Of a DNA stretch of 64,000 nt, positions 4,128-32,960 are shown piece after piece. Location of the stretch: positions 186,001 to 250,000 of IMG/VR virus record IMGVR_UViG_3300028393_000019; one strand, written 5' to 3'. The notes beneath the pieces were generated by a model. That model was not told the DNA's origin and made no database searches. It saw nothing but the letters and a program-made list of their open reading frames with translations. Within the stretch, counting starts at the first letter, position 1. Every line of letters starts with the position of its first letter. The translations under genes were made by a program, and so were the position numbers.

Positions 4128-4649
4128 CAAGTATTTGGGAACTAGTCCTATATTAGTTCCAGCATGCCAGCTGTGTATGTGGTTGTACTGATAGATGATT
4201 CCCTGCGGTTCATTATAATAAGCATCCTGTTCGGTAACGAATACATGTCCCGGCGCAGGTTTACTTAAGAAACAAAAAAATCTCACTAGTTCGCCTAACT
4301 GCTTGTGCTCTTCTTCCCATGGATTGATATCCCAATGCCATGGTGTACATTTACCAGGACGTAGCTCACTGACCCAACACATCAAAGGGTTGGCATTAAC
4401 AGACATACTGATGGCAAGTTCATAGTTTTTATGGAAATGCAAACCAGATTGGTAATGTCGATATTCCACTGTATGTTCATTATATCCTGCAGAGGTCAGT
4501 GCGGCGGTTTGACTAATATACTCATTGTAGTAAGGATTAGATTCTTCCAGTGTCATGTGACCGTGACTGGGTTCAACTTTGCGTGTTTTTATTTCAGCGA
4601 TTAGACTTTCACACAAAGCCCCAGTGAGCGTAGCTACATATTTTTTCAT
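4104..4649 (-). CDS. Fe(II)/2OG-type cupin oxygenase, paralog of the 17.2-20.9 kb array
   Basis: PWHWD, PGHVF, SWHAGTNIG shared with the array. Confidence 0.65.
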   Translation of the reverse strand: MKKYVATLTGALCESLIAEIKTRKVEPSHGHMTLEESNPYYNEYISQTAALTSAGYNEHTVEYRHYQSGLHFHKNYELAISMSVNANPLMCWVSELRPGKCTPWHWDINPWEEEHKQLGELVRFFCFLSKPAPGHVFVTEQDAYYNEPQGIIYQYNHIHSWHAGTNIGLVPKYLLTFTGYR

Positions 4650-5311
4650 ATTATTTTAAACTCATTAGGTAAGATGCATTTCAACGAATTTAACTTGTCT
4701 TTTTCTATATTAAAATTTATTGTCACATTGCCGTATGAAAATTTGTTTATAAATCCTAGTTTATTTGCTTTGTTAAGCCAGGTGCTTATAGTGTTATCAA
4801 AAATAAATCTAGCATCGTCGGCATTTGCCACAGTTGAAGCTAAAGCCACGCTGACTGGATCTGTCAATTTATTCCTTTTTAGTAACTGTCTAACTACCAA
4901 CTGTACTCTAGCACGACGACCAAAGTTAGTAGCAGTATGTAAAACTCCTGCATCCATGTCGTACCATATTCCGTCTTGTACTAATTTGTGTAGTTGTGGT
5001 GTCACTAGGTCGATCAAGTAACATTGCTCGCCCAATATATTAAGATGATATCTATCATCTATATCTGCATGTGTTTGATAGCATTGATTAGGATCCAAAA
5101 TAATAATCCTCGCTTCGCCCTTCGGTACTGGCAACGAGTCATACAAAGTTTGCCAAACTGTATCTTTGTACTCATCCTTTAATACCCACGAGTCGTAGAA
5201 GAAATCACCTGTTGACTGGTTAATCGTAGTTTTCATACCACCAGTGGGCAACGAACTACAAGCCTCTTGAAATAACTTTGAATCTACTGTATAATCTGTT
5301 TGAGTAAGCAT
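4646..5311 (-). CDS. Asp/Asn beta-hydroxylase-like oxygenase
   Basis: THADIDDRYHLNI ... LHTATNFG..R; start moved to ATG 5311 (MLTQTDY), 4 nt after TAAATA. Confidence 0.65.
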   Translation of the reverse strand: MLTQTDYTVDSKLFQEACSSLPTGGMKTTINQSTGDFFYDSWVLKDEYKDTVWQTLYDSLPVPKGEARIIILDPNQCYQTHADIDDRYHLNILGEQCYLIDLVTPQLHKLVQDGIWYDMDAGVLHTATNFGRRARVQLVVRQLLKRNKLTDPVSVALASTVANADDARFIFDNTISTWLNKANKLGFINKFSYGNVTINFNIEKDKLNSLKCILPNEFKII

Positions 5312-5315
5312 GAAA

Positions 5316-5345
5316 TATTTATGTGCTACTATTATAGTGTAAATA
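5316..5345. promoter_or_regulatory. Divergent late-type promoter pair
   Basis: TAAATA on minus (5316-5321) and plus (5340-5345), each 4 nt before an ATG. Confidence 0.65.
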
Positions 5346-5349
5346 AAAC

Positions 5350-6207
5350 ATGGAACGTATACGCATCGCAGAATCCTATGACGAAAAATGGCTAGAGTCC
5401 GAGCGGCCACAGCCGTTGATAGATAATCATATCGAAGCATTAACTGCACAAGTTGTTAAGGGTGGAGTATTTAAGGATATTACAGATCAAGTATATATAG
5501 ATTATAAAAAGGAAATGACCAGGTGGTTATTACAGTCTAAAATTAATACAGTTACAGGATTAGATGATTTTAATCGTGTAGATATTATAAACGGTTGTAC
5601 ACAGTTTATAGACACAGCATATATGAACGGACCTGTACAAGTCTTAGCCGGTGACTATAGATATCATGCTAGACTAGGTAATTGTTATATACATCCTGGA
5701 TTCCTAAGTGAAGAAAAGCAATTAGTAATTGCTTGGCCATTTCCTAGTACAGGTGACACTCACCCAAAGATGAAGGAGATATTAGATGAAGCGCAAGACA
5801 AGGGAATTGGTGTACATGTGGACGGTGCTTGGCTTACTTGCTGCCGCGGAATTGACTTTGATTTATCACATCCATCTATTAAGTCAGTTGCTATAAGTTT
5901 GAGCAAAGGACTGGGACTGGGATGGAACAGAATTGGCTTACGTTGGACTAAGAGTAAGGATGCTGATGCTGTTACAATACAAAATGACTTCAATATGAAT
6001 CTTCGGGCTCCTGCTATGATCGGACTACATTTTTTACGGAATCTAGAACCGGATTACTTATGGAACACCCACAGCGATAGATACTATAAAATATGTCATG
6101 ACTTTGTACTCAAACCGACTAGAAGTATATACCTAGCACTACGCAACGGACAACCGGTTGGTGTTAGCCCATTGATAAGGTATTTAGAAAATGCAAACAT
6201 TTCATGA
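5350..6207 (+). CDS. PLP-dependent fold-type I enzyme (aminotransferase/aldolase-like)
   Basis: VHVDGAW (PLP Asp) and SLSKGLG (Schiff-base Lys). Confidence 0.75.
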   Translation: MERIRIAESYDEKWLESERPQPLIDNHIEALTAQVVKGGVFKDITDQVYIDYKKEMTRWLLQSKINTVTGLDDFNRVDIINGCTQFIDTAYMNGPVQVLAGDYRYHARLGNCYIHPGFLSEEKQLVIAWPFPSTGDTHPKMKEILDEAQDKGIGVHVDGAWLTCCRGIDFDLSHPSIKSVAISLSKGLGLGWNRIGLRWTKSKDADAVTIQNDFNMNLRAPAMIGLHFLRNLEPDYLWNTHSDRYYKICHDFVLKPTRSIYLALRNGQPVGVSPLIRYLENANIS

Positions 6208-6919
6208 TATAGACAGTGTGCGTATTCATTTGCGCGACGACTGGAAAAATGTTGCTATCAGTGTAAGTGGGGGGGCAGACTCTGCGCTATTAGCATACCT
6301 AATATGTTCGTTAGTAACAGATCAAACTGTACATATAATTTCTCACAACCGAATGTGGAAGACTCGTCCATGGCAAAGCTATGATAGTTTTAATGTATAT
6401 ACTTGGCTGTTAACAAGATTTCCAAATATTAGATTTGTAAGACATATTAATTTTATAGCACCAGACATCGAGTACGGAAATATAGGCCCTAATCTAACTG
6501 ACGAGTATGGCAAAAAGGTCAGCGGTGATAATATACAACAACGTGCTTACGCAGAATTTGTTTGTCACACTAACGACGTAGATGCATACTATAATGGTGT
6601 TACACGTAATCCTCGTCTAGCACAGTTCAATGGCATGCTAGAACGCGACATTGAACGTACCAACGATAATGAACATTTGGAATACATGATTCACATGGGA
6701 AGAGTTGCATGCCATCCGTTTCGATTTGTAGACAAATCATGGGTTGTAAACAAATACAAAGAGTTAGGCATTATGGATTTGTTTGACATTACACGCAGTT
6801 GCGAGGGTGAGTTTGAAGATATAAATTACACAAATTACAAAGCCGGGCAATACGTTCCCATATGTGGCGAATGTTTCTGGTGTAAAGAAAGGACCTGGGC
6901 AATTGAACAAAGCAAGTAA
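6191..6919 (+). CDS. QueC-like PP-loop ATPase
   Basis: SVSGGADS PP-loop; C-terminal SC...CGECFWCKER zinc site. Confidence 0.7.
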   Translation: MQTFHDIDSVRIHLRDDWKNVAISVSGGADSALLAYLICSLVTDQTVHIISHNRMWKTRPWQSYDSFNVYTWLLTRFPNIRFVRHINFIAPDIEYGNIGPNLTDEYGKKVSGDNIQQRAYAEFVCHTNDVDAYYNGVTRNPRLAQFNGMLERDIERTNDNEHLEYMIHMGRVACHPFRFVDKSWVVNKYKELGIMDLFDITRSCEGEFEDINYTNYKAGQYVPICGECFWCKERTWAIEQSK

Positions 6920-8168
6920 AACATTTTGTATGCACCCTTTTACAGGATTGGCTACTAGAGAAGACGGCGCCATACAGGCTTGCTGTCGTAGCCACCCTGT
7001 TGGTTTTATACAGCAGAACAGTTTGGAAGAAATTTGGAACAATGACACAATGAAACGTATACGTAAGTCAGTGCTTACTAACATACGTCCGCCAGAGTGC
7101 GAGCCATGTTTTAGACTAGAAGATCAGGGCGTCGAATCCTTGCGAGAACGTCATATAAGCGGTGTAATCCCCGAAGCACGGGTCAACTTGTACCCCAATG
7201 CGTTAAATGCGTTAAAAGACGATTACACTATGCCTTTTGAAATTCCTACGATGGAACTAAAGTTAAACAATCTGTGTAACCTCAAATGCCGCATGTGTCA
7301 CCCAGGAGACAGCACTAGTTGGAACGATTGGGATGTAGTAAAAAAGTACTATCAAGGTGAAGGTCAAGTTATTTTTAACATGGTTGAAGAACACGACTTA
7401 GAACGCAAGCCATTACTCGACAAGTTCAAAGATAATAAAGACTGGTGGACAAGTTTAGAAAAGAATTTGCCATATTTTAGACGTGTTGAGTTTGCCGGCG
7501 GCGAGCCTTTAATGGATCCACAGCATTATCGTATATTGGACATGCTCAAGCCATACGGGCATCAAATTGAAATCAAGTATGCTACCAATGGCACAACATT
7601 GGGAATCAAAGGTGGAAGGAATATACATGACTATTGGCCTCATTTTAGAAGTGTTGCCGTTAACGTCAGCATTGACGGCATTGACAATGTTTACAATTAC
7701 ATTCGCGGCAACGGTGATTGGAATCAGATTGTTACAAATATAAAAGAAATACAAACTATTCCAAATGTGAGTAGAGTAGTCGGCGCTGTAGCTGTACAAG
7801 TTGGTAATATTATGCATCTCGATAAAATGCTGAAATACTTTTTAGATGATTTAGGAATTGTATTTTATACCAATATGGTTAATCATCCCACGGTGCTGTC
7901 AACACAGGTACTACCTGCTCATCTCAAAGAACAAGCTACTATTAATTTAAATTTTGCTAAACTCTATGTACAAGATTACAAATTGGTAAAACAACATCCT
8001 ATGTTATTAGATCTTACTCTAAAACAGATAGACGGTGTTATTAATTATATGTGGGCAAATGATCATAGCGACCGATGGCAAGATTGCATAGCATTTAATC
8101 AAGCATTGGATAAAACACGCAATCAAAGTTTCTTTGATGTTATACCGGATTTTATAGATTATGCTTAA
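6864..8168 (+). CDS. Radical SAM protein with N-terminal twitch/SPASM-like domain
   Basis: N-terminal FCMHPF...ACC...SLEEIWN...CEPC; CNLKCRMC; FAGGEP. Start may be TTG 6903. Confidence 0.9.
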   Translation: MANVSGVKKGPGQLNKASKTFCMHPFTGLATREDGAIQACCRSHPVGFIQQNSLEEIWNNDTMKRIRKSVLTNIRPPECEPCFRLEDQGVESLRERHISGVIPEARVNLYPNALNALKDDYTMPFEIPTMELKLNNLCNLKCRMCHPGDSTSWNDWDVVKKYYQGEGQVIFNMVEEHDLERKPLLDKFKDNKDWWTSLEKNLPYFRRVEFAGGEPLMDPQHYRILDMLKPYGHQIEIKYATNGTTLGIKGGRNIHDYWPHFRSVAVNVSIDGIDNVYNYIRGNGDWNQIVTNIKEIQTIPNVSRVVGAVAVQVGNIMHLDKMLKYFLDDLGIVFYTNMVNHPTVLSTQVLPAHLKEQATINLNFAKLYVQDYKLVKQHPMLLDLTLKQIDGVINYMWANDHSDRWQDCIAFNQALDKTRNQSFFDVIPDFIDYA

Positions 8169-9057
8169 GGTAACTAGTCGCTGGCCTCATCAGAACTCTG
8201 TCAAGATTGAATGGAATCTTGGAAAACGTTGCAACTACGATTGCAGTTATTGCCCGAGTGAGATACACGACAACTCCAGTCAGCATACTGACATAGAAAT
8301 ACTTAAGAGTTCTGTGGATCAATTAATGAAACTAGGAAAACCTATTCGTATTAGTTTTACAGGAGGCGAGCCTACTGTGCATCCCAAGTTCGAAGAGTTG
8401 GTGAACTACTGTAAGAATCAAGGCGTAAGTTGGGTGAGCGTTACTACCAATGGCACACGCAAAGATGATTGGTATGCTAATCTACGTGCAGATCAGATTG
8501 TGTTTAGTGTACACATGGAGTACGATGTCCGACGAGTTTTAAATACAATCGTAAATGTTAACGAATACTTTGCAGGAAAAGTAATGGTACATGTCATGGC
8601 GCATCAGGATCATATGAAGCGCACTAGATATATTGCAGGTGCATTGGCCGCAAGTGCTGTTCCACACGCTGTCCGTAGAGTACGTTGGACACAAGGTGAT
8701 CATGATCTGTTTGACGATATGCGGTATGGAGCGGACGACCTAGCATGGGTCAAAGAATACGAGACCACTGTAGAAGGTAATTGTATCATTGATGATACTA
8801 AAAAGATGCATGCCAACGATGTTATTAAACTGCATCTAAACAAGTACAAAGATTGGACTTGTAACGCAGGTATAGAAAGTCTAATGATAAATTGGGATGG
8901 CGATGTACACAGAGCCACTTGTAGAGTTGGCGGTAGTTTGGGCAATATTTATGATGGTAGTTTTGTTGTGCCTAGTCAACCTGTAGTTTGTGATCGTAAC
9001 TTCTGTACCTGTGCGGCAGACATTCCACTTACAAAATATGCGTCTAACAAATCTTAA
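8161..9057 (+). CDS. Radical SAM protein with C-terminal twitch-like domain
   Basis: CNYDCSYC, FTGGEP, WTCNAG...C...CDRNFCTC. Confidence 0.9.
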   Translation: MLKVTSRWPHQNSVKIEWNLGKRCNYDCSYCPSEIHDNSSQHTDIEILKSSVDQLMKLGKPIRISFTGGEPTVHPKFEELVNYCKNQGVSWVSVTTNGTRKDDWYANLRADQIVFSVHMEYDVRRVLNTIVNVNEYFAGKVMVHVMAHQDHMKRTRYIAGALAASAVPHAVRRVRWTQGDHDLFDDMRYGADDLAWVKEYETTVEGNCIIDDTKKMHANDVIKLHLNKYKDWTCNAGIESLMINWDGDVHRATCRVGGSLGNIYDGSFVVPSQPVVCDRNFCTCAADIPLTKYASNKS

Positions 9058-9847
9058 TCCTTCTAAGTACAAAAGGTTCTTTGCCTTTGGTTGTAGTTTT
9101 ACGAAATATTCATGGCCAACTTGGGCAGATATTATAGGCCAAGATGTGCCTGTTTATCAAAATTGGGCTACACCCGGTGCTGGCAATCATTATATATTTA
9201 ATAGCATTATGGAAGCCGATGCACGATATAAATTTAATAACAATGACTTAGTGATAGTAATGTGGAGTTGTAAAGAGCGAGAAGATCGATACTCTAATAA
9301 CAAATGGCTGAGTGACACAAATTTATCACAAGAAAAAACTTACGGTAAAAAATGGGTTAAAAACTTTGGTACAGATTTGCGCGGCTTTCTAATTAGAGAT
9401 CTCGGTTACATAGCAGGAGCACAAAGTACAATACAAAAAGCTAGTTGGGAACAGTTTTGTCTGAACCCGTTAACAAACATCGATGATACTAAAGCAGTAT
9501 TAGATGGAGTTGACTTAGATTCTATTACTGAAGAGATTGGAAGAGAATATTGGATTAAGGCATTTGATAAACTATGCACCGGCAGTGATATTGATCCATA
9601 CCTTGATAATGCAGATGTTATAGAAACTTATAAGGATTTATTTTTAAATATTAACAAATCGCTTGAAGGTAGATGGACTTTTGAGTATGTTAAAAATCGT
9701 GTAGCACCAAACAATGATAACCATCCCACTCCTTTAGAAGCATTGGAATTTTTAAATAATGTATGGCCTGGCAATTCGTTAAGTATTGAAGCACAGAACC
9801 ATGCAAGACAATGGAACGTTAATCATTCGTTAATTACAAGACTTTAG
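9038..9847 (+). CDS. SGNH/GDSL-like hydrolase
   Basis: FAFGCSFT block I and NDNHP block V; start moved to ATG 9038. Confidence 0.55.
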   Translation: MRLTNLNPSKYKRFFAFGCSFTKYSWPTWADIIGQDVPVYQNWATPGAGNHYIFNSIMEADARYKFNNNDLVIVMWSCKEREDRYSNNKWLSDTNLSQEKTYGKKWVKNFGTDLRGFLIRDLGYIAGAQSTIQKASWEQFCLNPLTNIDDTKAVLDGVDLDSITEEIGREYWIKAFDKLCTGSDIDPYLDNADVIETYKDLFLNINKSLEGRWTFEYVKNRVAPNNDNHPTPLEALEFLNNVWPGNSLSIEAQNHARQWNVNHSLITRL

Positions 9848-10820
9848 ATTTAGTAATATGAGTATCCGATTGACAACTACAATAATTTAATGGACAAATG
9901 ATTTGCTCTGGGGTAACATCTGCATCAAACCCTTCACTAAAAAGATTTAAAGTTTTGCCACCAAATGCGTTTAATTGGCAAGATCCTGCTAGTAAATCTC
10001 CGGACGCATTTATACTAATAGATTCGTAACCAACATTACATTTCCAGTCTTTAAATTTATTCCATCCATTAGTTATTAGTGTATGTGGACGAGCAGTTAC
10101 CGCAGTATCATCATTAAATAAAACAACACTTTCGTGAAATTTAATTTCATTTATTCTTTTAAATATCCAAGTACTGTCCGGTATGCGTTTAAGGCTGTTA
10201 TTAACATAATCAAACTGTTCTGGAGTATATACATCTATACCGTGTCCTGGAGCATCGATAATTTCTTTAGTTTGTATGTACCAAGGATGTTTACTAGTCA
10301 TCATTCGATCAACATAACTAATACATTTGTCCCATTGTTTGGCATCCATCAGCATTAACGCAGTTACTTTCAAACCTGCTTCAAATAATAAATCACCCAC
10401 AGCAATATGATGATCAATATCCACATACTCGCTATGACAACTAAGAACTGCATCATCAAAATACGCAGAATTATCATTCCACCATCTTAAAGTTCTCGAT
10501 GCGTTTGTAACAATAGTAATATAAACATCGTGACTTTCTTTAAGTTCTTTGCAAAATTGTTCTATGTGTGGCCACATAGTGGGCTCGCCACCGCCCGCTA
10601 TAGTAAGATGAAATTTCTGTTTATTGAGCTTCTTTGTATATGCATCAAATAATTTTTTAAAATTTTTAATTACTAAATCTACATTTTTTGGGTATCGATA
10701 ACGTTCATCATGCGATCCTGGAAAACAATAGCTACAATTAAAATTACAGATATCTGTAGGGAAGAATACAACCTTTACTAAGTTTGTTTCTTGTGTAGAA
10801 ATAACTTTAATAGGTATCAT
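9834..10820 (-). CDS. Radical SAM protein with C-terminal twitch-like domain
   Basis: CNFNCSYC, GGGEP, WKCNVGYES...C...CPLNYCSC. Confidence 0.9.
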   Translation of the reverse strand: MIPIKVISTQETNLVKVVFFPTDICNFNCSYCFPGSHDERYRYPKNVDLVIKNFKKLFDAYTKKLNKQKFHLTIAGGGEPTMWPHIEQFCKELKESHDVYITIVTNASRTLRWWNDNSAYFDDAVLSCHSEYVDIDHHIAVGDLLFEAGLKVTALMLMDAKQWDKCISYVDRMMTSKHPWYIQTKEIIDAPGHGIDVYTPEQFDYVNNSLKRIPDSTWIFKRINEIKFHESVVLFNDDTAVTARPHTLITNGWNKFKDWKCNVGYESISINASGDLLAGSCQLNAFGGKTLNLFSEGFDADVTPEQIICPLNYCSCQSDTHITKSKVL

Positions 10821-12229
10821 AGTAGGTGTTCCAACTCAGGAAATACTTTCTTAGCCGTTAACTTGCGAATAGCATCCAAGTTAACAACATATTCTTTGAA
10901 ATCTGGCAGCAAGTGTGTATGGTCTTCTGCTTGTATAAATTTTAAAATAGCTTCCCAGCGTTTCCATCCGTAAGGATTATCTTTCCAGAAGTTGTCGTCC
11001 TGTCGGTAGTTGTCCCAAAGCCATTGTTTAAAGTCTGCAAACTGTTGCACGATTTCATCTTTGTCTGACTGTGGCAATATCCTAGCACTTAGAAATGTTG
11101 GAATATACAACAAGTGTAGGTTGATAATGCCACCGCCGGTTTCATAGTCGTCTAGTTTAAACTTATTAATTTTCTTAAAGCCTTGTGATAATTTCCATTT
11201 AGCAAAATCGATGATGTGTTTTACATTAAACACCTGTACTGCACATGCAATAGCACAGTGTATGGTATCAGGGGCATTGTCCATTAACCATAAACTACGT
11301 TCAATGTCGGCCCAGTCGGTAGGATATCGAATGTAATTGTTGCGTTCCATAACTGCATCTATACTAAAAGCATAACGTACTTGCTTGAACTGAGCCCATA
11401 CTGCAATAATATCTTCGTTGACAAATATACCATTGCTGTTGTATCGTAAACTAATGTTCTTAGCATAGCCGCGCTTGATAATTTCATCTAAAAATCTACG
11501 ATGCTCTTTTATCATCAAAGGCTCGCCACCGGCAAAGTATAATTGTGTTATGTTAGGAATCTGTTCAAAAACATCGTCCCAAAACTCTGGCTTTTCGTAC
11601 CACGTGTTATTGAATTCCTCTTTGTCAAAACCTACCTGCTTCAACACAATAGTACTTTTTGTTTTGGCAACTAGTTTATCATAATCTTGTAACCATCGAC
11701 TGCTGTCATGTGGACTGCACATGACACATTTTAAATTGCAAGTGTGTCCAAGTCTCAAGTCTAGATATCGGATAATAGGAGGCACAGCTCCAGTAGCATC
11801 GGTGTCAGCTACAAGTTTATTAAAATCAAGGCCGTCATGATTCCACTCGTACATTTCCCATAAGCGTTTGCTTACAACACCGTTGGACTCTTCTTCAAAG
11901 CACTTTGTACAGCTGGCAGGTATCTTGCCTTCTAACATGGTTAACCTTACACTGCGCATGTATTGATTATTGAATGCCTCTAATGGTGTTTCACGTCCAA
12001 AGTTTGCAGGTTTGCCATCTTCTTTCTTAACTAGTCCCACTTCGTGATCACCTGTTGACGCTCCACTGGCATTAGTTACACAGCATAATCTAGCATCACC
12101 ATTCGGTCGGGTAGCTACATGTATCCAGGGCAATGCACAAAAACTATAGCTACCTGTTTTTTGTTTTATAAGTTGTTGACCTGCTCCGATACGTGTATGT
12201 TCAGGTTGTAGCCAATATATGTTATTCAT
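10817..12229 (-). CDS. Radical SAM protein with N-terminal twitch/SPASM-like domain
   Basis: FCALPW...LCC...CTKC, then CNLKCVMC and FAGGEP. Confidence 0.9.
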   Translation of the reverse strand: MNNIYWLQPEHTRIGAGQQLIKQKTGSYSFCALPWIHVATRPNGDARLCCVTNASGASTGDHEVGLVKKEDGKPANFGRETPLEAFNNQYMRSVRLTMLEGKIPASCTKCFEEESNGVVSKRLWEMYEWNHDGLDFNKLVADTDATGAVPPIIRYLDLRLGHTCNLKCVMCSPHDSSRWLQDYDKLVAKTKSTIVLKQVGFDKEEFNNTWYEKPEFWDDVFEQIPNITQLYFAGGEPLMIKEHRRFLDEIIKRGYAKNISLRYNSNGIFVNEDIIAVWAQFKQVRYAFSIDAVMERNNYIRYPTDWADIERSLWLMDNAPDTIHCAIACAVQVFNVKHIIDFAKWKLSQGFKKINKFKLDDYETGGGIINLHLLYIPTFLSARILPQSDKDEIVQQFADFKQWLWDNYRQDDNFWKDNPYGWKRWEAILKFIQAEDHTHLLPDFKEYVVNLDAIRKLTAKKVFPELEHLL

Positions 12230-13313
12230 TAAACTCTCTAAGTTCTAAAAATTGATCTCTGCACTGGCTGACTTCTACTTCTGGAAATTTACCACATACC
12301 CTAGCGCACATTAGGATAGATTTGTCTTCAAATCTTTTGTTCCACATAGTTTGCCATGTTTCACTATCGACAATTTCTTGCATAGTATGGATTCGTAGAT
12401 CCAGCCCATCTATCCCGCCAAACTCTGTAATTGCCGTCAACAGTGAAGCTGTACTGTCGTTCATAAAATTATACACTAACTTGTCCGGAGTGGCGTATTG
12501 ATACGGCACACTGGCTAGGAAACAACAAGGCCATAGGTGCCCTTGTGCATCTATGTATATACTGCGTTCATCTTCTACTTGACAACTGATAGTGGCAGTC
12601 TTGATAACTTCTCTATAGTTTTCTACGGTCTTGCGATCAATAAAGGCGATCTTTTGCTCTCCAGGCGGCAATAGAGTATGCGTTACCGTGCCATCCTTAC
12701 CAAATACTTTAAATTCTTTGCTACCAATAAATCTACTAGTTTGCTTTTCGTGAAAACTTTCAAATCCCAAATCGTTAGCCATTTGTCTGCAAGTTTCTAA
12801 TTGATGCTCGTTATGTTGGAATGTAATAAAGTTCCAACGTGCTCTTCCGCCTGCCTCGATAAATGCTTGAGCATTGCGTATGATCATATCAAAGTCTGTA
12901 CCCACACGATATAAACTGTGTGTATCTGCTAGTCCATCGATCCCAAACAATACCAAATGATTCTTTGGCAATACCTGAGCAAGCTCTTGCCACCACTTGA
13001 CTGTCCTAGCACTGGCATTGGTATGTATGTGAATGTCAATTTTGGGATTCTCTGCCACAGTGTATCTGAGCATGGGGATCAAATCATTGTTCATAATTGG
13101 ATCACCAAAATTGCCACACATAGAGATACTACCTAATTGTGCTAGTAGACTAGGAATCATAGTATTCTTATAAAACTCTAAATCCATATTTCGTTCTATC
13201 AAATTTGGATTAGTCAATCCGCCGTGGTTATTCCTAGCACACATTGGGCATGATGCTTGGCATAGAGTTGATATCTCTAGGTGTATTTGACGAATCTCAT
13301 TATATTTGTACAT
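12222..13313 (-). CDS. Radical SAM/SPASM-type protein
   Basis: CQASCPMC, CGNFGDP, C-terminal WPCC...CARVCG. Confidence 0.9.
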   Translation of the reverse strand: MYKYNEIRQIHLEISTLCQASCPMCARNNHGGLTNPNLIERNMDLEFYKNTMIPSLLAQLGSISMCGNFGDPIMNNDLIPMLRYTVAENPKIDIHIHTNASARTVKWWQELAQVLPKNHLVLFGIDGLADTHSLYRVGTDFDMIIRNAQAFIEAGGRARWNFITFQHNEHQLETCRQMANDLGFESFHEKQTSRFIGSKEFKVFGKDGTVTHTLLPPGEQKIAFIDRKTVENYREVIKTATISCQVEDERSIYIDAQGHLWPCCFLASVPYQYATPDKLVYNFMNDSTASLLTAITEFGGIDGLDLRIHTMQEIVDSETWQTMWNKRFEDKSILMCARVCGKFPEVEVSQCRDQFLELREFNE

Positions 13314-13327
13314 GTGTGCAGGGTGGT

Positions 13328-13333
13328 TAAATA
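13328..13333 (+). promoter_or_regulatory. Late-type promoter motif TAAATA
   Basis: 4 nt before ATG 13338; a minus-strand copy lies at 13341-13346. Confidence 0.55.
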
Positions 13334-28005: not shown

Positions 28006-29922
28006 ATGAAAAATGTCTATCTTATACAAACTGAAATTACTTCCGGACCCTCTAATGAGCACTACCTACCATTCAGTGTAGGATGTATTTGGGCCTATGC
28101 AAACCAATTTGATTATGTGAAAAATAACTATAAATTGCAAGATGTTATTTGGCGGAGAGATAGACAAAAAAATGTAATTGAAAAGATCATCGACCCTAGT
28201 ATCATTGGATTTAGTTGCTACGTATGGAATCATAAATGGAATCTAACCTTAGCTAAGAAATTAAAAGAACGTTTTCCAAACTGTCTAATAGTGTTTGGTG
28301 GTCCTAGTGTTAATGAAGAATGGCTCAAATACGATTTTATCGATGTTGCAATGTTTGGCGAGGGAGAAGTTGCATGGGCTAATCTTTTAAAGATGAATCT
28401 TAATAACGAGACTATTCCGAGATATTGGAATAACCCGAGACAAACAGATATTGAAAATTATCCTAGCCCTTACACTACAGGGTTCTTTGATAAAATTATT
28501 GCAGACAATCCAGATATTAGTTGGTTTATGATGCTAGAAACTAACAGAGGATGTCCTTATCACTGTACGTTTTGCGGCTGGGGAGCCGACTATCTTAACA
28601 AACTAAAAAACTTTAACCTACATAGGGTTGAGGAAGAAATCAAATGGGCTATAACACATAACATACATTGGATGTTTGTGATCGATGCTAACTCAGGTAT
28701 AATGAAAGAACGTGATGTCGAAGTAGCGTGGATGATCCGCAGAGCTATAGAAGCACCCAACAGCAAAATTAGACGTGTAACCTTTAACCATGCTAAAAAT
28801 TTAAATGAGCATTGTTTTGAAATGGAAAAGATTATTCAAGCATGGACTTACGGTTTAGAAATGGCTATACAAAGCATGCACCAGCCCACACTAGATGCTG
28901 TGAAAAGAATTAACATGGGTATGAACAATTTAGAACGTGCTTATGCCTTATGCCGTAAACACGGTATTAGATACTACACAGAGATGGTTTTAGGTTTACC
29001 TTTAGAAACCAAGGACACTTATATTAATGGCCTAATGAGATTAATGGAATTAGGACAACACGACAGCGTTAAAACTTATCCTGCTACTGTTATTCCTAAT
29101 AGTGAAATGGACAGTGAAGAGTATAGAAACAAATACGGAATTAAGTTGATATATCCTAAAGATATGTATCGTAGTCCCGAAGAACGCATATGGGACGACG
29201 AAGATAGTAGTCATGAAAATATTGCCATGGTGTCGAGCACAAATACTGCTACCAGCCAAGATATTGCAGATTCATTAGCGTACAGTTGGATGATGAGTCA
29301 ATTTCATTATTTAGGAATAACACAACTTACTTCACGGTACTTGTATGAAATGCATAATGTTCCATACCGTCAATATTATGATGCATTATACAACGCAATT
29401 AAGAACGACATTATAGGCGGTCCTATACTAAATGATGTAGAAGAAATATTTGTAAATTATTTCACTTACGGTGAAATGCCTGTAGGTGAAAAATGGAAGA
29501 ACGTAGTTGCATTGACTATGCCCGAAAGTTACGGTATGGACGATATATTTGAAAACAAGAATCATTTTATAGACCTCGGAGTTACCGTTGGAAACTTATT
29601 TCATACTATAGATCCAAGTGTCATAGAATTACAGTATGCTTTTATGTTGGATGAAAGCAAATCATATCCATTCATTCTAGAATCAGATATAGATATTGAT
29701 AGATGGGAACGTTTATCATGCTCATATTCGGTTAATAGGCGTTACATGGTTAGTCACATGCATGACCAAATGTATCAAAAATATTTGCTTAAAACTGATA
29801 TTGCAAATATTAATAATCCTTATGTTGAAACCGACATAGAAGATTCATATAAAGGCAATAAGATCTCAGTCATTCCTATTTTACCTATACCTACAACTAC
29901 CGCTAGTGGGAGAGTTATGTAA
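28006..29922 (+). CDS. Cobalamin-binding (class B) radical SAM protein
   Basis: N-terminal B12 domain (IGFSCYVWN, VFGGP, GEGE) and ETNRGCPYHCTFCGW. Confidence 0.9.
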   Translation: MKNVYLIQTEITSGPSNEHYLPFSVGCIWAYANQFDYVKNNYKLQDVIWRRDRQKNVIEKIIDPSIIGFSCYVWNHKWNLTLAKKLKERFPNCLIVFGGPSVNEEWLKYDFIDVAMFGEGEVAWANLLKMNLNNETIPRYWNNPRQTDIENYPSPYTTGFFDKIIADNPDISWFMMLETNRGCPYHCTFCGWGADYLNKLKNFNLHRVEEEIKWAITHNIHWMFVIDANSGIMKERDVEVAWMIRRAIEAPNSKIRRVTFNHAKNLNEHCFEMEKIIQAWTYGLEMAIQSMHQPTLDAVKRINMGMNNLERAYALCRKHGIRYYTEMVLGLPLETKDTYINGLMRLMELGQHDSVKTYPATVIPNSEMDSEEYRNKYGIKLIYPKDMYRSPEERIWDDEDSSHENIAMVSSTNTATSQDIADSLAYSWMMSQFHYLGITQLTSRYLYEMHNVPYRQYYDALYNAIKNDIIGGPILNDVEEIFVNYFTYGEMPVGEKWKNVVALTMPESYGMDDIFENKNHFIDLGVTVGNLFHTIDPSVIELQYAFMLDESKSYPFILESDIDIDRWERLSCSYSVNRRYMVSHMHDQMYQKYLLKTDIANINNPYVETDIEDSYKGNKISVIPILPIPTTTASGRVM

Positions 29923-31082
29923 TGTTAATGGGCTTTAATCAAACTAACATAGACCGATTACTAGCAAGTATAAATGGTACAGTTTTAGATCCAACAGTAA
30001 GCCTATGCCATCATTGCCATAGACATATACCAGCATGGCGCTACCATAAAGATAATCAGGTGTTTATAGCCAAGTCATGTCCCATACATGGTATTAGCCA
30101 TCATATGATCGAATCTGACTATGAGTTTTATGCTAATCTATATTACACCCAGGATAATCCAGATTTTAATTTTAATGGCGGAGTACTTATCGAAGGTAGT
30201 GACCGCTGTAATTTAGAATGCCCACATTGTTACCATTTACCAGAAAACGATGCCCGCGACCCTTCTATAGAAGAATTGCTCGATCAAATACGAGATATGC
30301 CGGTAGGCGAGGATGGAGTACATAGAATCATCCTCGCCGGTGCTGAAAGTACCTTACGCAAAGACTTTCCAGAATTGATAACAGCTATCCGTGAGTTAGA
30401 TCCCGAAATGGATGTTAGTGTAATGACTAATGGCATACGTTTCAATGACAGCGATTTTATTCATAAATGTGTTGAAGCTGGACTTGCAGGTGTTAACATT
30501 GGGCTTAATCATCCAAGTTACATCGATCACGAAACTGTAAGACGTAAACAAGTTAGTGCTATTGAAAACATGCACCGTGAAGATATCAAGATAGGTTACA
30601 TTAGTTATACTATGGTAGACTTCAGTGAGCTTGATTACATACTAACTGAGATTACTAGTAATCCTTGGACTCCTAAAAATTTCCGCATACGTAATGGTGC
30701 AGAAATAGGACGTAATGCCAGCACCGAACAACCGTTTGTTAGCAACTTATACAAACGTGCGGAGCAATGGTGCAAGGATCATAGTAAACAGTTTGAACGA
30801 ATCATAGAAGCAGACAATAATATCTATCATGTTATGGTTAAGATTGAAGATAAAATTGTGCGATTAATCAGCTGGTGCGATGAAACCAATATTGATATGG
30901 AAGAATTGCGTAGCGGACCTTGGTGTAACTTTGTACCCGACGGTATTACAAACTTCTTACATCAGATTATACGCAGAGATGTGTTTAAAAATAAAGGACT
31001 AGCCTTACCGGATAGCCCTCCTAGTCGATATAAATTTAATCGCACACCCGATAAGTCAAAACTTAATTTGCTAAATCTATAA
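29922..31082 (+). CDS. Radical SAM protein with Tes/MJ0619 (COG1964)-like N-terminal metal site
   Basis: SLCHHCHRHIPA...KSCPIHG, CNLECPHC, TNGIRF, C-terminal PDG. Confidence 0.8.
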   Translation: MLMGFNQTNIDRLLASINGTVLDPTVSLCHHCHRHIPAWRYHKDNQVFIAKSCPIHGISHHMIESDYEFYANLYYTQDNPDFNFNGGVLIEGSDRCNLECPHCYHLPENDARDPSIEELLDQIRDMPVGEDGVHRIILAGAESTLRKDFPELITAIRELDPEMDVSVMTNGIRFNDSDFIHKCVEAGLAGVNIGLNHPSYIDHETVRRKQVSAIENMHREDIKIGYISYTMVDFSELDYILTEITSNPWTPKNFRIRNGAEIGRNASTEQPFVSNLYKRAEQWCKDHSKQFERIIEADNNIYHVMVKIEDKIVRLISWCDETNIDMEELRSGPWCNFVPDGITNFLHQIIRRDVFKNKGLALPDSPPSRYKFNRTPDKSKLNLLNL

Positions 31083-31419: not shown

Positions 31420-32013
31420 TTAAGGCTTCCTTCCTATGATCATGTAACGTGTGTACAGGGGTAATTTCATTTCGCCGCCCCAAAGAAAATGTAATCCACA
31501 AGTTTCCTTAAATTCATCAAATGATTTATGCCACCGCACATGCTCGGGGATATTATAATCATTACTTTGGATAATAATCAAACTACCGTTAGGCATTCTA
31601 TCCAACCATTTATCGTATTGTGCTTGTGTTAAGTGTTCACAGCTAGTATTAATAATAATATCTGCAACAGAAATTACATCGCACATATCTGCCGTATACG
31701 CTTTGAACCGACCTTCAATTTCTTCACCCTTGTTCATTAGCGTAGCAATAGGTTCGCAGGTTGGATCAATGTCAATACTGCGAATAGTAGTAATGGGAAT
31801 GTTGCTCTGAAATAACATGCTGGCAAGTGTACCAACCCAGCCGCCGAAGATGTCTATGCTAGATGCAAAATGCACATGCTCATCTAGACAATCAATCAAC
31901 CATTCTTTGCTTTTTAATTGCCCCGACCAAAAGGCATCCATAGTACGCATAGGGTCCGGGCTTTGACGGATGGCCTGCATCCAATGGTGTAAATGGTTTG
32001 TATCTATCTGCAT
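31420..32013 (-). CDS. Class I SAM-dependent methyltransferase-like protein
   Basis: IDIFGGWVG glycine motif, IRSIDID, TADM, IINTSCEH. Confidence 0.65.
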   Translation of the reverse strand: MQIDTNHLHHWMQAIRQSPDPMRTMDAFWSGQLKSKEWLIDCLDEHVHFASSIDIFGGWVGTLASMLFQSNIPITTIRSIDIDPTCEPIATLMNKGEEIEGRFKAYTADMCDVISVADIIINTSCEHLTQAQYDKWLDRMPNGSLIIIQSNDYNIPEHVRWHKSFDEFKETCGLHFLWGGEMKLPLYTRYMIIGRKP

Positions 32014-32960
32014 TTTGGTATCTTGCTGTCCGCACTACTAACACATCTAGTAGTCACGCATTTTTGTGGCACAGAAAACAAAGTAAATTTTTCTATCGTG
32101 CCCAGTGCGGCTTCGTGGCAACTGTAAGCACGTTTGACTTCCGTACCTTTTATTATAACACTCTGATAACCTGCATTACAAGTCCAATTGGCAAATTGAT
32201 TAAACCCCAGTGCATTAAACCGTTCTGCTTGATCTATAAAATAATTTTTATCACCATCCATTAAACGGATTTGATAACCTTCCTGCTGTTCAAAATCGTT
32301 TTGCATTATATCAACCATCTCAGCTGTGTAGCCTTCCACTATGGCGGTGGCACTGTCATTGCTTTGTGGTTTAAGTGTTACATTAATTCCACGAGCTCGA
32401 AATCGTTCACAGCGTTCTAGTGTTTCAAAGAACAGTTCTGGCACCATAACTTGATTAACAGTTACATGAACCCGCTCGTTCATTAACTGTAAACACTTGT
32501 CACCGAACTCGTGCTCCTTGGCGAACTCTGCATGAAAGCTGGCTGTAATACTGCGGCGCTGTAGACAATCAGTGATGCTACACCAGTTTTTCCACCAGCT
32601 GGGTCCCGGACTCAAATTGGTAGTCATATGTATACTTTGGTAGGGACTTTCTAATTCATCTATATGTTTGATCAATTCGGGCAACTGTTTGTACGCAGTA
32701 GGTTCACCTCCTGAGAAGCTCCAGTGAAATTGGGTGAATCCGTTCAAACGAGCTTGACGTTTTATCTCGTCGACTGTAGTCTTATAGACTTCTAAACTTT
32801 GGTAATCCAAATTGTCGCTTCGGGCATAGGGCCAACAATAGCTACATTTGTAATTACAAAATCTACCTAGGATCCAACTTATGTTAAATAATGGGCGATC
32901 CAACATTGTTTGTTGCCCAAAATGCGTTATGTCTTTGAAAGGAATGATTGCGAAGTTCAT
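32004..32960 (-). CDS. Radical SAM protein with C-terminal twitch-like domain
   Basis: CNYKCSYC, FSGGEP, WTCNAGYQS...C...CVTTRC. Confidence 0.9.
   Translation of the reverse strand: MNFAIIPFKDITHFGQQTMLDRPLFNISWILGRFCNYKCSYCWPYARSDNLDYQSLEVYKTTVDEIKRQARLNGFTQFHWSFSGGEPTAYKQLPELIKHIDELESPYQSIHMTTNLSPGPSWWKNWCSITDCLQRRSITASFHAEFAKEHEFGDKCLQLMNERVHVTVNQVMVPELFFETLERCERFRARGINVTLKPQSNDSATAIVEGYTAEMVDIMQNDFEQQEGYQIRLMDGDKNYFIDQAERFNALGFNQFANWTCNAGYQSVIIKGTEVKRAYSCHEAALGTIEKFTLFSVPQKCVTTRCVSSADSKIPKCR

What the first reader, a model, noticed from the sequence alone, without database searches (positions are those of the whole stretch)
6864..13313. Mirror-image pairs of N-twitch and C-twitch radical SAM genes
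Seen: on the plus strand an rSAM with N-terminal Fe-S twitch domain (6864) precedes one with a C-terminal twitch (8161). On the minus strand the same order recurs (10817 then 9834), converging on an SGNH gene. Further members lie at 32004 (C-type, WxCNxG motif) and 46760 (N-type). Known from recall: N-terminal twitch rSAMs are an uncharacterised family found mostly in uncultured aquatic samples. Inference: the two types work as an obligate pair or in sequential steps.
Basis: partly seen in the sequence, partly recalled or inferred. Interest (0 to 1): 0.6.

Follow-up and report, generated by a model that had tools for sequence, protein, structure and literature searches.

The report
Radical SAM gene pairs, jumbo phage
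A freshwater jumbo phage packs all nine of its radical-SAM enzyme genes into one island, including two head-to-head couples of an uncharacterised 'N-terminal twitch' enzyme followed by a small 'C-terminal twitch' enzyme. The coupling is real and conserved in related phages, but it is not a rule of the family, and the island most likely tailors an unusual sugar or glycoconjugate.

Summary
Genes 6864-8168(+), 10817-12229(-) and 46760-48121(+) are clear members of NCBIfam NF033640 (N-terminal twitch rSAM). Genes 8161-9057(+), 9834-10820(-) and 32004-32960(-) are about 300-aa rSAMs with a C-terminal WxCNxG Cys-rich domain, and their best structural matches are the twitch enzymes SkfB and BlsE. All nine rSAM genes of the 265.7-kb jumbo myophage lie in this window.

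The two N->C couples are parts of two convergent, translationally coupled operons. In 79 related viral loci, N1 is followed by C1 in 52 of 60 cases and N2 by a C-type in 47 of 81. The N1-C1 module stays together through rearrangements.

The pairing is specific to these two subfamilies and is not obligate. No N3-clade gene is paired. In Bdellovibrionota the family forms tandem N-N arrays of 4-13 copies per genome, and only 28% of N genes have a C-type within 3 kb, although C-types are strongly enriched beside N-types (7 of 12, against 0.19 expected). Cultured jumbo phages carry N-types without C-types.

Context points to consecutive radical steps on a nucleotide-sugar or glycoconjugate substrate: RmlC, SDR dehydratases, UDP-Glc dehydrogenase, a split TPP E1, aminotransferase-like and QueC-like genes, and GT2 in bacteria. 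The substrate remains unproven.

The parts
4646..5449 (-). Cupin / 2-His-1-carboxylate oxygenase-like protein, a conserved flank of the cassette
   Evidence: H-x-D ... H motif is invariant in 13 homologues. The family is present in 45 related loci. No Pfam match.
5350..6207 (+). First gene of the plus-strand operon: class-I aminotransferase-like (PLP motif) protein of 285 aa
   Evidence: D158, S183, K186 and R194 are invariant within PFPSTG / HIDGAW / SLSKGLGLGWNRIG blocks. Best PDB profile hits are aminotransferases 3if2 and 3g7q, at E 0.13-0.23, which is not significant. The family is the immediate neighbour of N-type rSAMs in phages and in 9 or more Bdellovibrionota loci. A promoter-like site (11 of 12 matches) lies at 5267-5295.
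6191..6919 (+). QueC-like PP-loop ATPase (SGGxDS, C-terminal CxxCxxC)
   Evidence: Alignment motifs. Atlas look-alike clusters score 0.98 with Pfam QueC in 17-59% of members. PHROG QueC-like at E 1e-4. Pfam QueC itself gives no match.
6864..8168 (+). N1: N-terminal-twitch radical SAM (NF033640)
   Evidence: 333.6 bits against a cut-off of 170. SPASM at 22-82 plus Radical_SAM. AF2 pLDDT 92.8. Gene callers elsewhere start it 13-22 codons later.
8161..9057 (+). C1: small radical SAM with a C-terminal twitch-like domain, 8 nt overlapped with N1
9038..9847 (+). X: DUF6071 / SGNH-like candidate, last gene of the plus-strand operon (ORF opens at 8990)
   Evidence: No family match. Atlas look-alikes are DUF6071 and Lipase_GDSL at 0.94-0.96. 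Gene callers give 269 aa.
9834..10820 (-). C2: small radical SAM with a C-terminal twitch-like domain, 4 nt overlapped with N2
10817..12229 (-). N2: N-terminal-twitch radical SAM (NF033640)
   Evidence: 378.1 bits. More than 580 viral relatives.
12222..13313 (-). R3: third radical SAM of the minus-strand operon. It has no N-terminal twitch and has a C-terminal Cys-rich (SPASM-like 'PCC') region
   Evidence: Radical_SAM 31.1 bits. PHROG 21308 E 2.7e-23. Cys pattern. R3->N2 adjacency in 31 related loci.
28006..29922 (+). B12-binding radical SAM (class B, KedN5-like C-methyltransferase family)
   Evidence: PF02310 plus PF04055. NF033712 at 155 bits, below its cut-off. The family occurs in 15 related loci.
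29922..31082 (+). Radical SAM with an N-terminal HMPTM-type zinc ribbon
   Evidence: PF04055 65.4 bits and PF23545 48.8 bits.
31420..32013 (-). 197-aa protein with class-I methyltransferase-like motifs, downstream of C3
   Evidence: GGWxG ... DIDP motifs are invariant. Present in 64 of 79 related loci, usually as C3 > this gene > R3 > N2. Homologues occur in 5 bacterial loci. No PDB or Pfam match.
32004..32960 (-). C3: C-type radical SAM (WTCNAG motif). In relatives it lies directly upstream of R3/N2
46760..48121 (+). N3: N-terminal-twitch radical SAM (NF033640), unpaired, within a deoxysugar operon
   Evidence: 346 bits. No member of the N3 clade is paired (0 of 32).
49536..55926 (+). Nucleotide-sugar genes downstream of N3: RmlC-like 3,5-epimerase (49536-50081), TPP E1-alpha-like (50078-50707), unknown (50692-52050), three SDR epimerase/dehydratases (52040-54947), transketolase-pyrimidine (E1-beta-like) domain (55309-55926)

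Best explanation
The two 'mirror-image pairs' are the cores of two convergent, translationally coupled operons. One reads aminotransferase-like > QueC-like > N1 > C1 > X. The other reads R3 > N2 > C2. Both sit in a flexible biosynthetic island of a freshwater jumbo myophage, and that island holds all nine of the phage's radical SAM genes.

Each N-type and each C-type keeps its own CX3CX2C cluster motif, its GGE SAM motif and its own auxiliary-cluster Cys set. Each is therefore most likely an independent SAM-cleaving enzyme (inferred). The coupled N and C enzymes most likely carry out consecutive radical steps on one small substrate, such as oxidation, dehydration, decarboxylation, epimerisation or C-C chemistry. 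Their twitch clusters would serve as electron sinks or conduits, as in BtrN and BlsE (inferred by analogy).

The most likely substrate class is a nucleotide-activated sugar, sugar acid or glycoconjugate. It would be further processed by the PLP-like, PP-loop, methyltransferase-like, cupin-oxygenase, B12-rSAM, SDR, RmlC and TPP-E1 enzymes of the island (inferred from context).

The coupling belongs to two viral subfamily pairs (N1/C1 and N2/C2), not to NF033640 as a whole.

Shown: family membership, domain architecture, operon overlaps, conservation and limits of adjacency, and N/C co-localisation in Bdellovibrionota. Inferred: activity, order of steps, substrate.
For: Membership and architecture.

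Coupling:
- Stop/start overlaps are conserved.
- N1->C1 in 52 of 60 and N2->C in 47 of 81.
- On trees, 51 of 57 genes in the N1 clade and 48 of 81 in the N2 clade are followed by a C-type.
- 44 of 49 genes in the C1 clade and 46 of 58 in the C2 clade are preceded by an N-type.
- The N1-C1 module moves as a unit in L015, L026, L038, L042, L049, L051, L067 and L074.
- N/C co-localisation recurs in 5 Bdellovibrionota genomes (7 of 12 against 0.19 expected), with variable order and stoichiometry.

Both partners keep catalytic motifs.

Sugar context:
- The N3 operon holds RmlC, E1-alpha, three SDRs and a transketolase domain.
- UDP-Glc/GDP-Man dehydrogenase and a GDP-mannose-dehydratase-like SDR lie inside the cassette in relatives. 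L032 and L043 read R3 > C3 > dehydrogenase > SDR > MTase-like > N2.
- GT2 is the commonest non-rSAM neighbour in bacterial loci, with 24 genes in 14 loci.
- BlsE, which acts on a glucuronate nucleoside, is the top or joint-top structural match of both N1 (Z 13.2) and C1 (Z 17.2).
- The aminotransferase-like family travels with N-type rSAMs in both phages and bacteria. This recalls the DesI/DesII pairing of a PLP enzyme with an rSAM, which I cite from established knowledge.
Against: - No enzyme activity or substrate is shown.
- Structural matches to BlsE, SkfB, anSME, MoaA and viperin lie within about 1-2 Z units of each other, so they do not separate sugar from peptide substrates.
- The window's own cassette (5350-13313) holds no recognisable sugar enzyme, and the record gives no Pfam GT2 match.
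- In Bdellovibrionota chromosomes some arrays sit among housekeeping genes with no sugar genes nearby.
- The island also carries a Trp halogenase, a nitroreductase, a class-III aminotransferase and AspH-like oxygenases, which would equally fit peptide or small-molecule tailoring.
- The aminotransferase-like, methyltransferase-like and SGNH-like calls rest on motifs or look-alikes, not on significant matches.
- The 79 viral loci are related by descent, so the counts are not independent events.
Confidence: 0.45

Rival explanations
1. Obligate two-component enzyme. N-type and C-type form a stable heterodimer in which one auxiliary cluster feeds or drains electrons for the other, and neither works alone.
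For: Conserved 4-nt and 8-nt stop/start overlaps favour equimolar co-translation. Adjacency is very high from the C side: 44 of 49 for C1 and 46 of 58 for C2. Intermolecular electron transfer between rSAM molecules has been proposed in the literature (title and abstract of PMC10470005, seen but not read in full).
Against: Both partners have complete catalytic and auxiliary motifs. The N3 clade is never paired. 72% of N genes in 5 Bdellovibrionota genomes have no C-type within 3 kb, and where linked the ratio is 2-3 N per C. C-types also follow R3. Cultured phages carry N without C. No N-C fusion was found.
Confidence: 0.12
2. RiPP or protein maturation. The rSAMs are SPASM/twitch-type peptide-modifying enzymes acting on a phage- or host-encoded peptide or protein. 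The AspH-like hydroxylases, halogenase, nitroreductase and B12-rSAM methylase would be further peptide tailoring enzymes.
For: SkfB (a twitch RiPP maturase) is the joint-top structural match of C1 (Z 17.3). Low-level NCBIfam hits go to many RiPP maturases. PF05118 AspH-like paralogues, a Trp halogenase, weak daptide-aminotransferase similarity and weak RiPP C-methyltransferase similarity are present.
Against: No RRE/PqqD-like domain was detected: the N-terminus of the N-type is a twitch, and the C-type starts directly at the cluster motif. No conserved small precursor-like ORF lies next to the cassette in phages, or inside a 7-gene bacterial array. All RiPP family scores are far below their cut-offs. 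The enzymes have one-cluster twitch domains rather than full seven-Cys SPASM domains. Sugar genes are embedded in the cassette in relatives.
Confidence: 0.15
3. DNA or nucleotide hypermodification. The cassette builds a modified base or a sugar or amino-acid adduct on phage DNA or on a nucleotide pool.
For: A QueC-like PP-loop gene lies directly upstream of N1. ThyX is adjacent to C3 in 6 relatives. The C-type's best NCBIfam hits include viperin and QueE, covering the cluster-binding region only. From established knowledge, phage thymidine hypermodification pathways are known to use PLP and rSAM enzymes.
Against: The record (72% complete) gives no TGT/DpdA, no Pfam QueC and no ThyA-family hydroxymethylase. 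Viperin and QueE scores are far below their cut-offs. The family's expansion to 4-13 copies in Bdellovibrionota chromosomes does not fit a phage-DNA role.
Confidence: 0.13
4. Adjacency is inherited synteny without a functional link. The rSAM genes are independent auxiliary genes that happen to be neighbours in a gene-dense island.
For: All 79 viral loci were retrieved through N2 orthologues of 56% identity or more, so they share ancestry. The island is mosaic.
Against: In a mosaic island with frequent insertions and inversions, N1-C1 and N2-C2 stay together more than most neighbours do. Overlapping reading frames are conserved. N/C co-localisation recurs in Bdellovibrionota with a different order.
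Confidence: 0.08

Closest known systems
NCBIfam NF033640 (N_Twi_rSAM, twitch domain-containing radical SAM protein)
   Same: N1, N2 and N3 score 334-378 bits against a cut-off of 170. They have the N-terminal four-Cys SPASM/twitch module ahead of the CX3CX2C core.
   Different: The family has a name but no known function. The subfamily-specific coupling to a small C-twitch rSAM and the phage/Bdellovibrionota distribution were not found described in the searched literature.
BlsE (cytosylglucuronate decarboxylase) and BtrN: twitch radical SAM enzymes acting on sugars
   Same: BlsE is the top or joint-top structural match for both models: Z 17.2 over 260 residues for C1 and Z 13.2 for N1. The BtrN twitch domain aligns to the N-terminal module of the N-type profile (E 0.004). 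Each has one auxiliary cluster and a small-molecule-sized enzyme.
   Different: Sequence identity is 15-19%. The TIGR04466 BlsE model was not among the best 25 NCBIfam rows shown for the N- and C-types. In the N-type the twitch is at the opposite terminus.
SkfB (sporulation killing factor maturase, twitch rSAM)
   Same: Joint-top structural match of C1 (Z 17.3, 251 residues) and best PDB sequence hit of the N-type profile (E 6.6e-8).
   Different: SkfB has an N-terminal peptide-binding region and an adjacent precursor gene. Neither was found here.
DesI/DesII (PLP aminotransferase plus radical SAM in desosamine biosynthesis) - from established knowledge
   Same: A PLP-type enzyme travels with an rSAM in a deoxysugar context. 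DesII is among the structural matches (Z 14.6 for C1).
   Different: The aminotransferase-like protein here has class-I rather than DegT-type motifs and is only 285 aa. Homology is not statistically established.
Two-rSAM systems such as CofG/CofH, HxsB/HxsC and ScmE/ScmF - from established knowledge and NCBIfam names
   Same: Two different rSAM genes kept adjacent and presumably acting on one substrate.
   Different: Those pairs co-occur consistently or are fused (FbiC). Here pairing holds only for two viral subfamilies and no fusion was seen.

Membership tests
NF033640 N_Twi_rSAM | Whole-protein score above the curated cut-off (170 bits) | tested here: met
   333.6, 378.1 and 346.0 bits for 6864, 10817 and 46760. 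Confirmed on the genome.
NF033640 N_Twi_rSAM | SPASM/twitch-like Cys module N-terminal to the CX3CX2C core | tested here: met
   Pfam SPASM at residues 22-82 (E 2.5e-8). C22, C41, C79 and C82 are invariant in 31 sequences. The AF2 model shows a beta-hairpin plus helices at 28-87. BtrN twitch match at E 0.004.
NF033640 N_Twi_rSAM | Binding of two [4Fe-4S] clusters and reductive SAM cleavage | not testable with these tools
   Only the motifs CX3CX2C and GGE are seen.
C-terminal twitch radical SAM (BlsE/SkfB/BtrN type) | CX3CX2C near the N-terminus, a partial TIM barrel, and a C-terminal beta-hairpin/helix module with 3-4 conserved Cys | tested here: met
   C24, C28 and C31 invariant. C234, C277 and C282 are conserved in at least 90% of sequences. 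Full-length structural matches to SkfB (Z 17.3) and BlsE (Z 17.2).
C-terminal twitch radical SAM (BlsE/SkfB/BtrN type) | Sequence-profile match of the C-terminal module to Pfam SPASM (PF13186) | tested here: not met
   Pfam gives only Radical_SAM and a weak Fer4_12 match for 8161, 9834 and 32004.
Viperin (NF038283) / QueE / MoaA | Score above the family cut-off over the whole protein | tested here: not met
   The best C-type hit to viperin is 57.8 bits against a cut-off of 180, and covers only the first 100 residues or so. MoaA and QueE are likewise far below cut-off.
RiPP rSAM/SPASM maturases | RRE/leader-binding domain, an adjacent precursor peptide gene, a seven-Cys SPASM domain | tested here: not met
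   No RRE-type domain or precursor-like conserved small ORF was found. Only one auxiliary Cys set is present. All maturase models score far below cut-off.
Obligate two-component rSAM pair (CofG/CofH-like) | Partners co-occur in essentially all genomes that have either one, or occur fused | tested here: not met
   N3 clade: 0 of 32 paired. 31 of 43 bacterial N genes have no C-type within 3 kb. Phages RsoM2USA and K566 carry N-types only. No N-C fusion.
Obligate two-component rSAM pair (CofG/CofH-like) | Physical complex of the two proteins | tested here: inconclusive
   The complex prediction gave no verdict. It counts neither for nor against.
SGNH/GDSL hydrolase (gene X, 9038-9847) | Profile match and the four conserved blocks (GDS, G, GxND, DxxH) | tested here: inconclusive
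   No Pfam, NCBIfam or PHROG match. Block I reads G-C-S, and an N-D-N-H-P stretch lies near the C-terminus. Atlas look-alikes are DUF6071 and Lipase_GDSL at 0.94-0.96.

The most novel reading that the evidence does not exclude
N-terminal-twitch rSAMs and their coupled C-twitch partners make up a previously unrecognised two-enzyme radical module. It would perform a new kind of transformation on nucleotide sugars or envelope glycoconjugates, for example successive radical oxidation/decarboxylation and C-C rearrangement. The module would be shared by two kinds of bacterial predators, jumbo phages and Bdellovibrionota, perhaps to mark 'self' glycans or to remodel the prey or host envelope.
Probability: 0.15. 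Interest if true: 0.75.

Novelty: new variant of a known kind. Interest (0 to 1): 0.55.

Why it matters
NF033640 is a large radical SAM family with an unusual inverted domain order and no known chemistry. More than 580 viral contigs matched in a single scan, and some Bdellovibrionota genomes hold up to 13 copies.

This work narrows where to look in three ways:
- It shows which subfamilies are coupled to a second rSAM.
- It shows which accessory genes travel with them across phages and bacteria: an aminotransferase-like protein, a methyltransferase-like protein and a QueC-like ATPase.
- It shows that nucleotide-sugar genes are interleaved with the cassette in related phages.

A phage that devotes nine oxygen-sensitive Fe-S enzymes to one island, in oxic lake water, is a notable case of viral auxiliary metabolism.

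Cultured handles exist for experiments: Ralstonia phage RsoM2USA gp202 and Vibrio phage K566 genes 0303-0308.

Tried and rejected
- Complex prediction of N1 with C1 gave score 0.00, 'no answer'. It is not evidence either way.
I did not pursue it by another route.
- Nucleotide search of 6100-14000 against cultured phages found no match.
- NCLDV capsid and T4 gp23 families were not found. The virus type was settled by tail sheath, TerL and RNR hits.
- Canonical 7-deazaguanine or hydroxymethyl-pyrimidine routes were not found: no Pfam QueC, TGT or ThyA. There is also no Pfam GT2 match in the record.
- PDB profile searches gave nothing significant for the QueC-like, aminotransferase-like and methyltransferase-like proteins.
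- Foldseek and VIA rankings could not separate sugar-acting from peptide-acting rSAM relatives.
- An inverted-duplication origin of the 'mirror image' is rejected. N1-N2 identity is 31% and C1-C2 is 30%. N2 groups with bacterial sequences (support 99) before it joins N1.
- A Rosetta-stone search found N3-type proteins with long extensions (716-1495 aa). The extensions have no Pfam match and no homology to window genes.
- The promoter/terminator scan was not above shuffled background.
- Literature searches found no paper on the family. One paper notes a marine T4-like viral genome with 12 rSAM genes (PMC5332604).
- No alternative genetic code was needed.

Full report
WHAT THE WINDOW IS

The window is bases 186001-250000 of a 265,680-bp IMG/VR viral record estimated 72% complete. 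Tail sheath (E 1.7e-193), large terminase, virion proteins and class I ribonucleotide reductase identify it as a jumbo myophage. NCLDV capsid and T4 gp23 families gave no hit. The exact N2 protein occurs on contigs from JGI samples 3300009151, 3300009182, 3300027747 and 3300010885. That these are freshwater lake samples is my recollection, not a tool result. No cultured phage matches the DNA.

CHECK OF THE OBSERVATION

- N-type. 6864-8168(+), 10817-12229(-) and 46760-48121(+) score 333.6, 378.1 and 346.0 bits on NCBIfam NF033640 'twitch domain-containing radical SAM protein' (cut-off 170).
- Pfam places a SPASM-type module at residues 22-82 of N1, ahead of the Radical_SAM core.
- In 31 viral and bacterial homologues, four N-terminal Cys, the CX3CX2C triad and the GGE motif are invariant.
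- The N-terminal part of the profile aligns to the C-terminal twitch of BtrN (E 0.004).
- C-type. 8161-9057(+), 9834-10820(-) and 32004-32960(-) are 298-328 aa. They carry CX3CX2C at about residue 24, a GGEP motif and a shared C-terminal W-x-C-N-x-G ... C ... C-x4-C block.
- Pfam does not call SPASM in the C-types. The AF2 model of C1 (pLDDT 89.9) aligns over nearly its full length to the twitch enzymes SkfB (Z 17.3) and BlsE (Z 17.2), about 2 Z units above MoaA, viperin and anSME. Foldseek puts BlsE first (TM 0.61).

So 'N-twitch' and 'C-twitch' are both justified.

- The 'SGNH gene' is the third gene of the plus-strand operon. Its ORF opens at 8990, gene callers start it at 9038, and its 3' end overlaps that of C2 by 14 nt. 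No profile library recognises it. Only language-model look-alikes (DUF6071, some Lipase_GDSL, 0.94-0.96) point to SGNH.
- The interval also contains a third rSAM, R3 (12222-13313). It overlaps N2 by 8 nt and has a C-terminal Cys-rich region but no N-terminal twitch.
- Two more rSAM genes lie at 28006-29922 (B12-binding class B) and 29922-31082 (zinc-ribbon type). A Radical_SAM scan of the whole record finds nine genes, all between window 6864 and 48121.

ANATOMY

The plus-strand operon reads 5350-6207 > 6191-6919 > N1 > C1 > X. The minus-strand operon reads R3 > N2 > C2. Successive genes overlap by 4-20 nt.

- 6191-6919 has the PP-loop SGGxDS motif and a C-terminal CxxCxxC. It looks like viral QueC-like proteins (0.98), although Pfam QueC itself does not match.
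- 5350-6207 has invariant residues in PFPSTG, HIDGAW and SLSKGLGLGWNRIG blocks. These resemble the class-I aminotransferase PLP signature. Its best PDB profile hits are aminotransferases, at non-significant E values of 0.13-0.23.
- The 197-aa gene downstream of C3 (31420-32013) has methyltransferase-like GxGxG and DIDP motifs but no database match.
- At least eight paralogues with an HxD...H triad occur in the window, three of which match PF05118. So does the 4646-5449 family.
- The window also holds a nitroreductase, a Trp halogenase and a class-III aminotransferase.

IS THE ADJACENCY CONSERVED?

A scan of IMG/VR with the N-type alignment gave more than 580 confirmed relatives. The best 80 loci have N2 orthologues of 56-100% identity. 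I classified their ORFs against the window's rSAMs. The typical cassette is:

C3 > methyltransferase-like > R3 > N2 > C2 > < C1 < (one inserted gene) < N1 < QueC-like < aminotransferase-like

So the 'further member at 32004' belongs to the same cassette in most relatives. In this phage it has moved about 20 kb away.

| Measure (79 loci, excluding L001, which matches the window itself at 100% identity) | Count |
|---|---|
| N1 followed within two same-strand genes by C1 | 52 of 60 |
| N2 followed by a C-type | 47 of 81 |
| R3 followed by N | 43 of 89 |
| R3 followed by a C-type | 36 of 89 |
| N2/C2 junction is a 4-nt overlap | 39 of 43 |
| N1/C1 junction is an 8-nt overlap | 20 of 37 |
| Full convergent layout seen (many contigs are truncated) | 29 of 79 |

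Where the cassette is rearranged (L015, L026, L038, L042, L049, L051, L067, L074), N1-C1 moves as one unit.

Results on trees:

| Clade | Members | Pairing |
|---|---|---|
| N1 | 57 viral (support 100) | 51 followed by a C-type |
| N2 | 81 | 48 followed by a C-type |
| N3 | 33 (28 bacterial) | none of 32 scorable genes |
| C1 | 49 | 44 preceded by N |
| C2 | 58 | 46 preceded by N, 2 by R3 |
| C3 | 51 | 4 preceded by N, 8 by R3, 35 by neither |

The two couples are not a recent inverted duplication. N1-N2 identity is 31% and C1-C2 is 30%. N2 groups with 32 bacterial sequences (support 99) before it joins N1.

OUTSIDE THE PHAGE CLADE

In GTDB species genomes the family is concentrated in Bdellovibrionota MAGs and chromosomes.

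- There N-type genes form tandem arrays of 2-7 paralogues.
- Only 22 of 195 are followed by a C-type, and 41 of 80 loci have neither C nor R3 within 6 kb.
- Five whole genomes carry 4-13 copies above cut-off. Fourteen control genomes carry none.
- In an even sample of the phylum, 31 of 151 genomes carry the family.
- In those five genomes 12 C-type matches exist and 7 lie within 3 kb of an N-type gene, against 0.19 expected (P about 1.6e-10). Only 12 of 43 N genes have a C-type that close, and the arrangements vary: N-N-N>C, C>N-N, N-N> <C.
- Two chromosomal arrays sit among nuo, atp, mfd and lon genes. One is seven rSAMs long with no other pathway gene.
- Cultured jumbo phages carry N-types without C-types: Ralstonia RsoM2USA gp202 (36% identical to N3) and four N-like genes in Vibrio K566.
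- No N-C fusion was seen. N3-type proteins fused to long unknown extensions do exist.

Conclusion on pairing. N and C types are functionally linked, since they co-localise in two very distant lineages with different gene orders. The link is that of members of one pathway, with tight coupling only in the viral N1/C1 and N2/C2 subfamilies. It is not an obligate 1:1 partnership. Both partners keep full catalytic motifs, which argues for two radical reactions rather than one enzyme plus a scaffold.

WHAT THE PATHWAY MIGHT BE

Evidence for a nucleotide-sugar or glycoconjugate substrate:

- N3 lies in one same-strand run with an RmlC-type 3,5-epimerase (116.6 bits), a TPP E1-alpha-like protein, three SDR epimerase/dehydratases (one GDP-fucose-synthase-like) and a transketolase pyrimidine-binding domain.
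- In relatives, a UDP-glucose/GDP-mannose dehydrogenase and a GDP-mannose-dehydratase-like SDR lie inside the cassette. L032 and L043 read R3 > C3 > dehydrogenase > SDR > methyltransferase-like > N2. In L055, L068 and L071 the dehydrogenase and another gene lie just upstream of C3.
- GT2 glycosyltransferases are the commonest non-rSAM neighbours in bacteria, with 24 genes in 14 loci.
- BlsE is the first or joint-first structural neighbour of both models.
- The aminotransferase-like family is the immediate neighbour of N-type genes in nine or more Bdellovibrionota loci as well as in phages. The methyltransferase-like family recurs in five. A PLP enzyme paired with an rSAM recalls DesI/DesII in desosamine biosynthesis (established knowledge).
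- A QueC-like ATPase could amidate a uronate carboxylate (inference only).

Against this reading:

- The structural ranking does not exclude peptide-acting relatives.
- The window's own cassette lacks a recognisable sugar enzyme.
- The record gives no Pfam GT2 match.
- Some bacterial arrays have no sugar genes nearby.
- The island's halogenase, nitroreductase and AspH-like oxygenases would also suit peptide, lipid A or small-molecule chemistry. A fatty-acid desaturase in relatives, patatin in bacteria and PagP next to the K566 cluster hint at lipids.

I put about 0.7 on 'consecutive steps of one pathway' and about 0.45-0.5 on 'sugar or glycoconjugate substrate'. The confidence of 0.45 in the best explanation is a rounded figure for the combined reading.

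RIVALS

- Obligate heterodimer (0.12). Favoured by translational coupling. Disfavoured by the family-wide counts.
- RiPP or protein maturation (0.15). No RRE, no precursor-like ORF, single-cluster twitch domains, and all maturase models far below cut-off.
- DNA or nucleotide hypermodification (0.13). The QueC-like gene and ThyX in relatives favour it. There is no TGT, QueC or ThyA family, and the expansion in bacterial chromosomes argues against it.
- Mere inherited synteny (0.08). Argued against by module integrity in a mosaic island and by co-localisation in Bdellovibrionota.

NOVELTY

The family is catalogued but uncharacterised. Three targeted literature searches found nothing on it. One paper notes a marine T4-like viral genome with 12 rSAM genes, without analysing them (PMC5332604).

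I did not find the following described in the searched literature:
- the subfamily-specific N>C coupling;
- the six-to-nine-rSAM phage cassette and its accessory genes;
- the expansion in Bdellovibrionota.

It is a new variant of a known kind, a multi-rSAM tailoring cluster, not a new category.

LIMITS

- The viral loci share ancestry, so the counts are not independent events.
- ORF starts in my gene maps are first-start approximations.
- Classification was by best BLAST hit to the window's paralogues.
- The aminotransferase-like, methyltransferase-like and SGNH-like calls are at motif or look-alike level.

Noticed in passing
window 28006-31082: Two more radical SAM genes lie back to back: a B12-binding class-B enzyme (KedN5-like, 155 bits) and an rSAM with an HMPTM-type zinc ribbon. 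The B12 type recurs in 15 related loci.
   Followed up: partly
window 23300-24868: A flavin-dependent tryptophan-halogenase family gene (PF04820, 313.6 bits) lies in the phage island.
   Followed up: no
window 1394-2023, 4104-4649, 4646-5449, 14410-15216, 17228-20855: At least nine paralogous HxD...H (cupin / AspH-LpxO-like) oxygenase-type genes are present, three of which match PF05118. This is an unusual expansion beside the rSAM genes.
   Followed up: partly
window 1-32000 and 48001-52000: GC content is 0.34-0.39 here against 0.41-0.44 in the rest of the window. The rSAM/oxygenase island and the N3 sugar operon look like lower-GC flexible islands.
   Followed up: no
window 32995-33090: ARAGORN calls a tRNA-Pro(GGG) of 96 nt, which is unusually long. 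It could hold an intron or be a false call.
   Followed up: no
window 50078-50707 and 55309-55926: A split TPP-dependent E1-alpha-like gene and a transketolase-pyrimidine (E1-beta-like) gene lie among sugar genes. This resembles two-carbon branching enzymes of branched-chain deoxysugar pathways (recalled, not tested).
   Followed up: no
L168 8707-18489; G001-G005; 151-genome sample of the phylum: NF033640 is strongly expanded in Bdellovibrionota. Five genomes have 4-13 copies and 31 of 151 sampled genomes carry it. One array of seven sits between the nuo and atp operons. None of 14 model genomes has a copy.
   Followed up: yes
L174 228-4715(-), L173 1949-4558(-), L172 1877-4027(-): N3-type rSAMs are fused to long extensions (total lengths 1495, 869 and 716 aa). 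The extensions have no Pfam match and no similarity to window genes. They are possible Rosetta-stone clues to function.
   Followed up: partly
L085, L089 (Crocinitomicaceae MAG); P0106 (Bacteroidota MAG): Close relatives of the phage cassette are binned into Bacteroidota MAGs on short contigs. This may hint at the host, or may be binning contamination.
   Followed up: no
L170 (Vibrio phage K566 161548-168284); L171 (Ralstonia phage RsoM2USA gp202): Cultured jumbo phages carry N-type rSAM genes annotated only as hypothetical or generic radical SAM proteins. In K566 a PagP-like gene lies about 3 kb downstream of the cluster.
   Followed up: partly
window 44367-45692: An ATP-dependent DNA ligase (PF01068 plus an OB domain) lies just upstream of the N3 operon. 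A homologue lies near the N3-type gene in RsoM2USA (28% identity).
   Followed up: no
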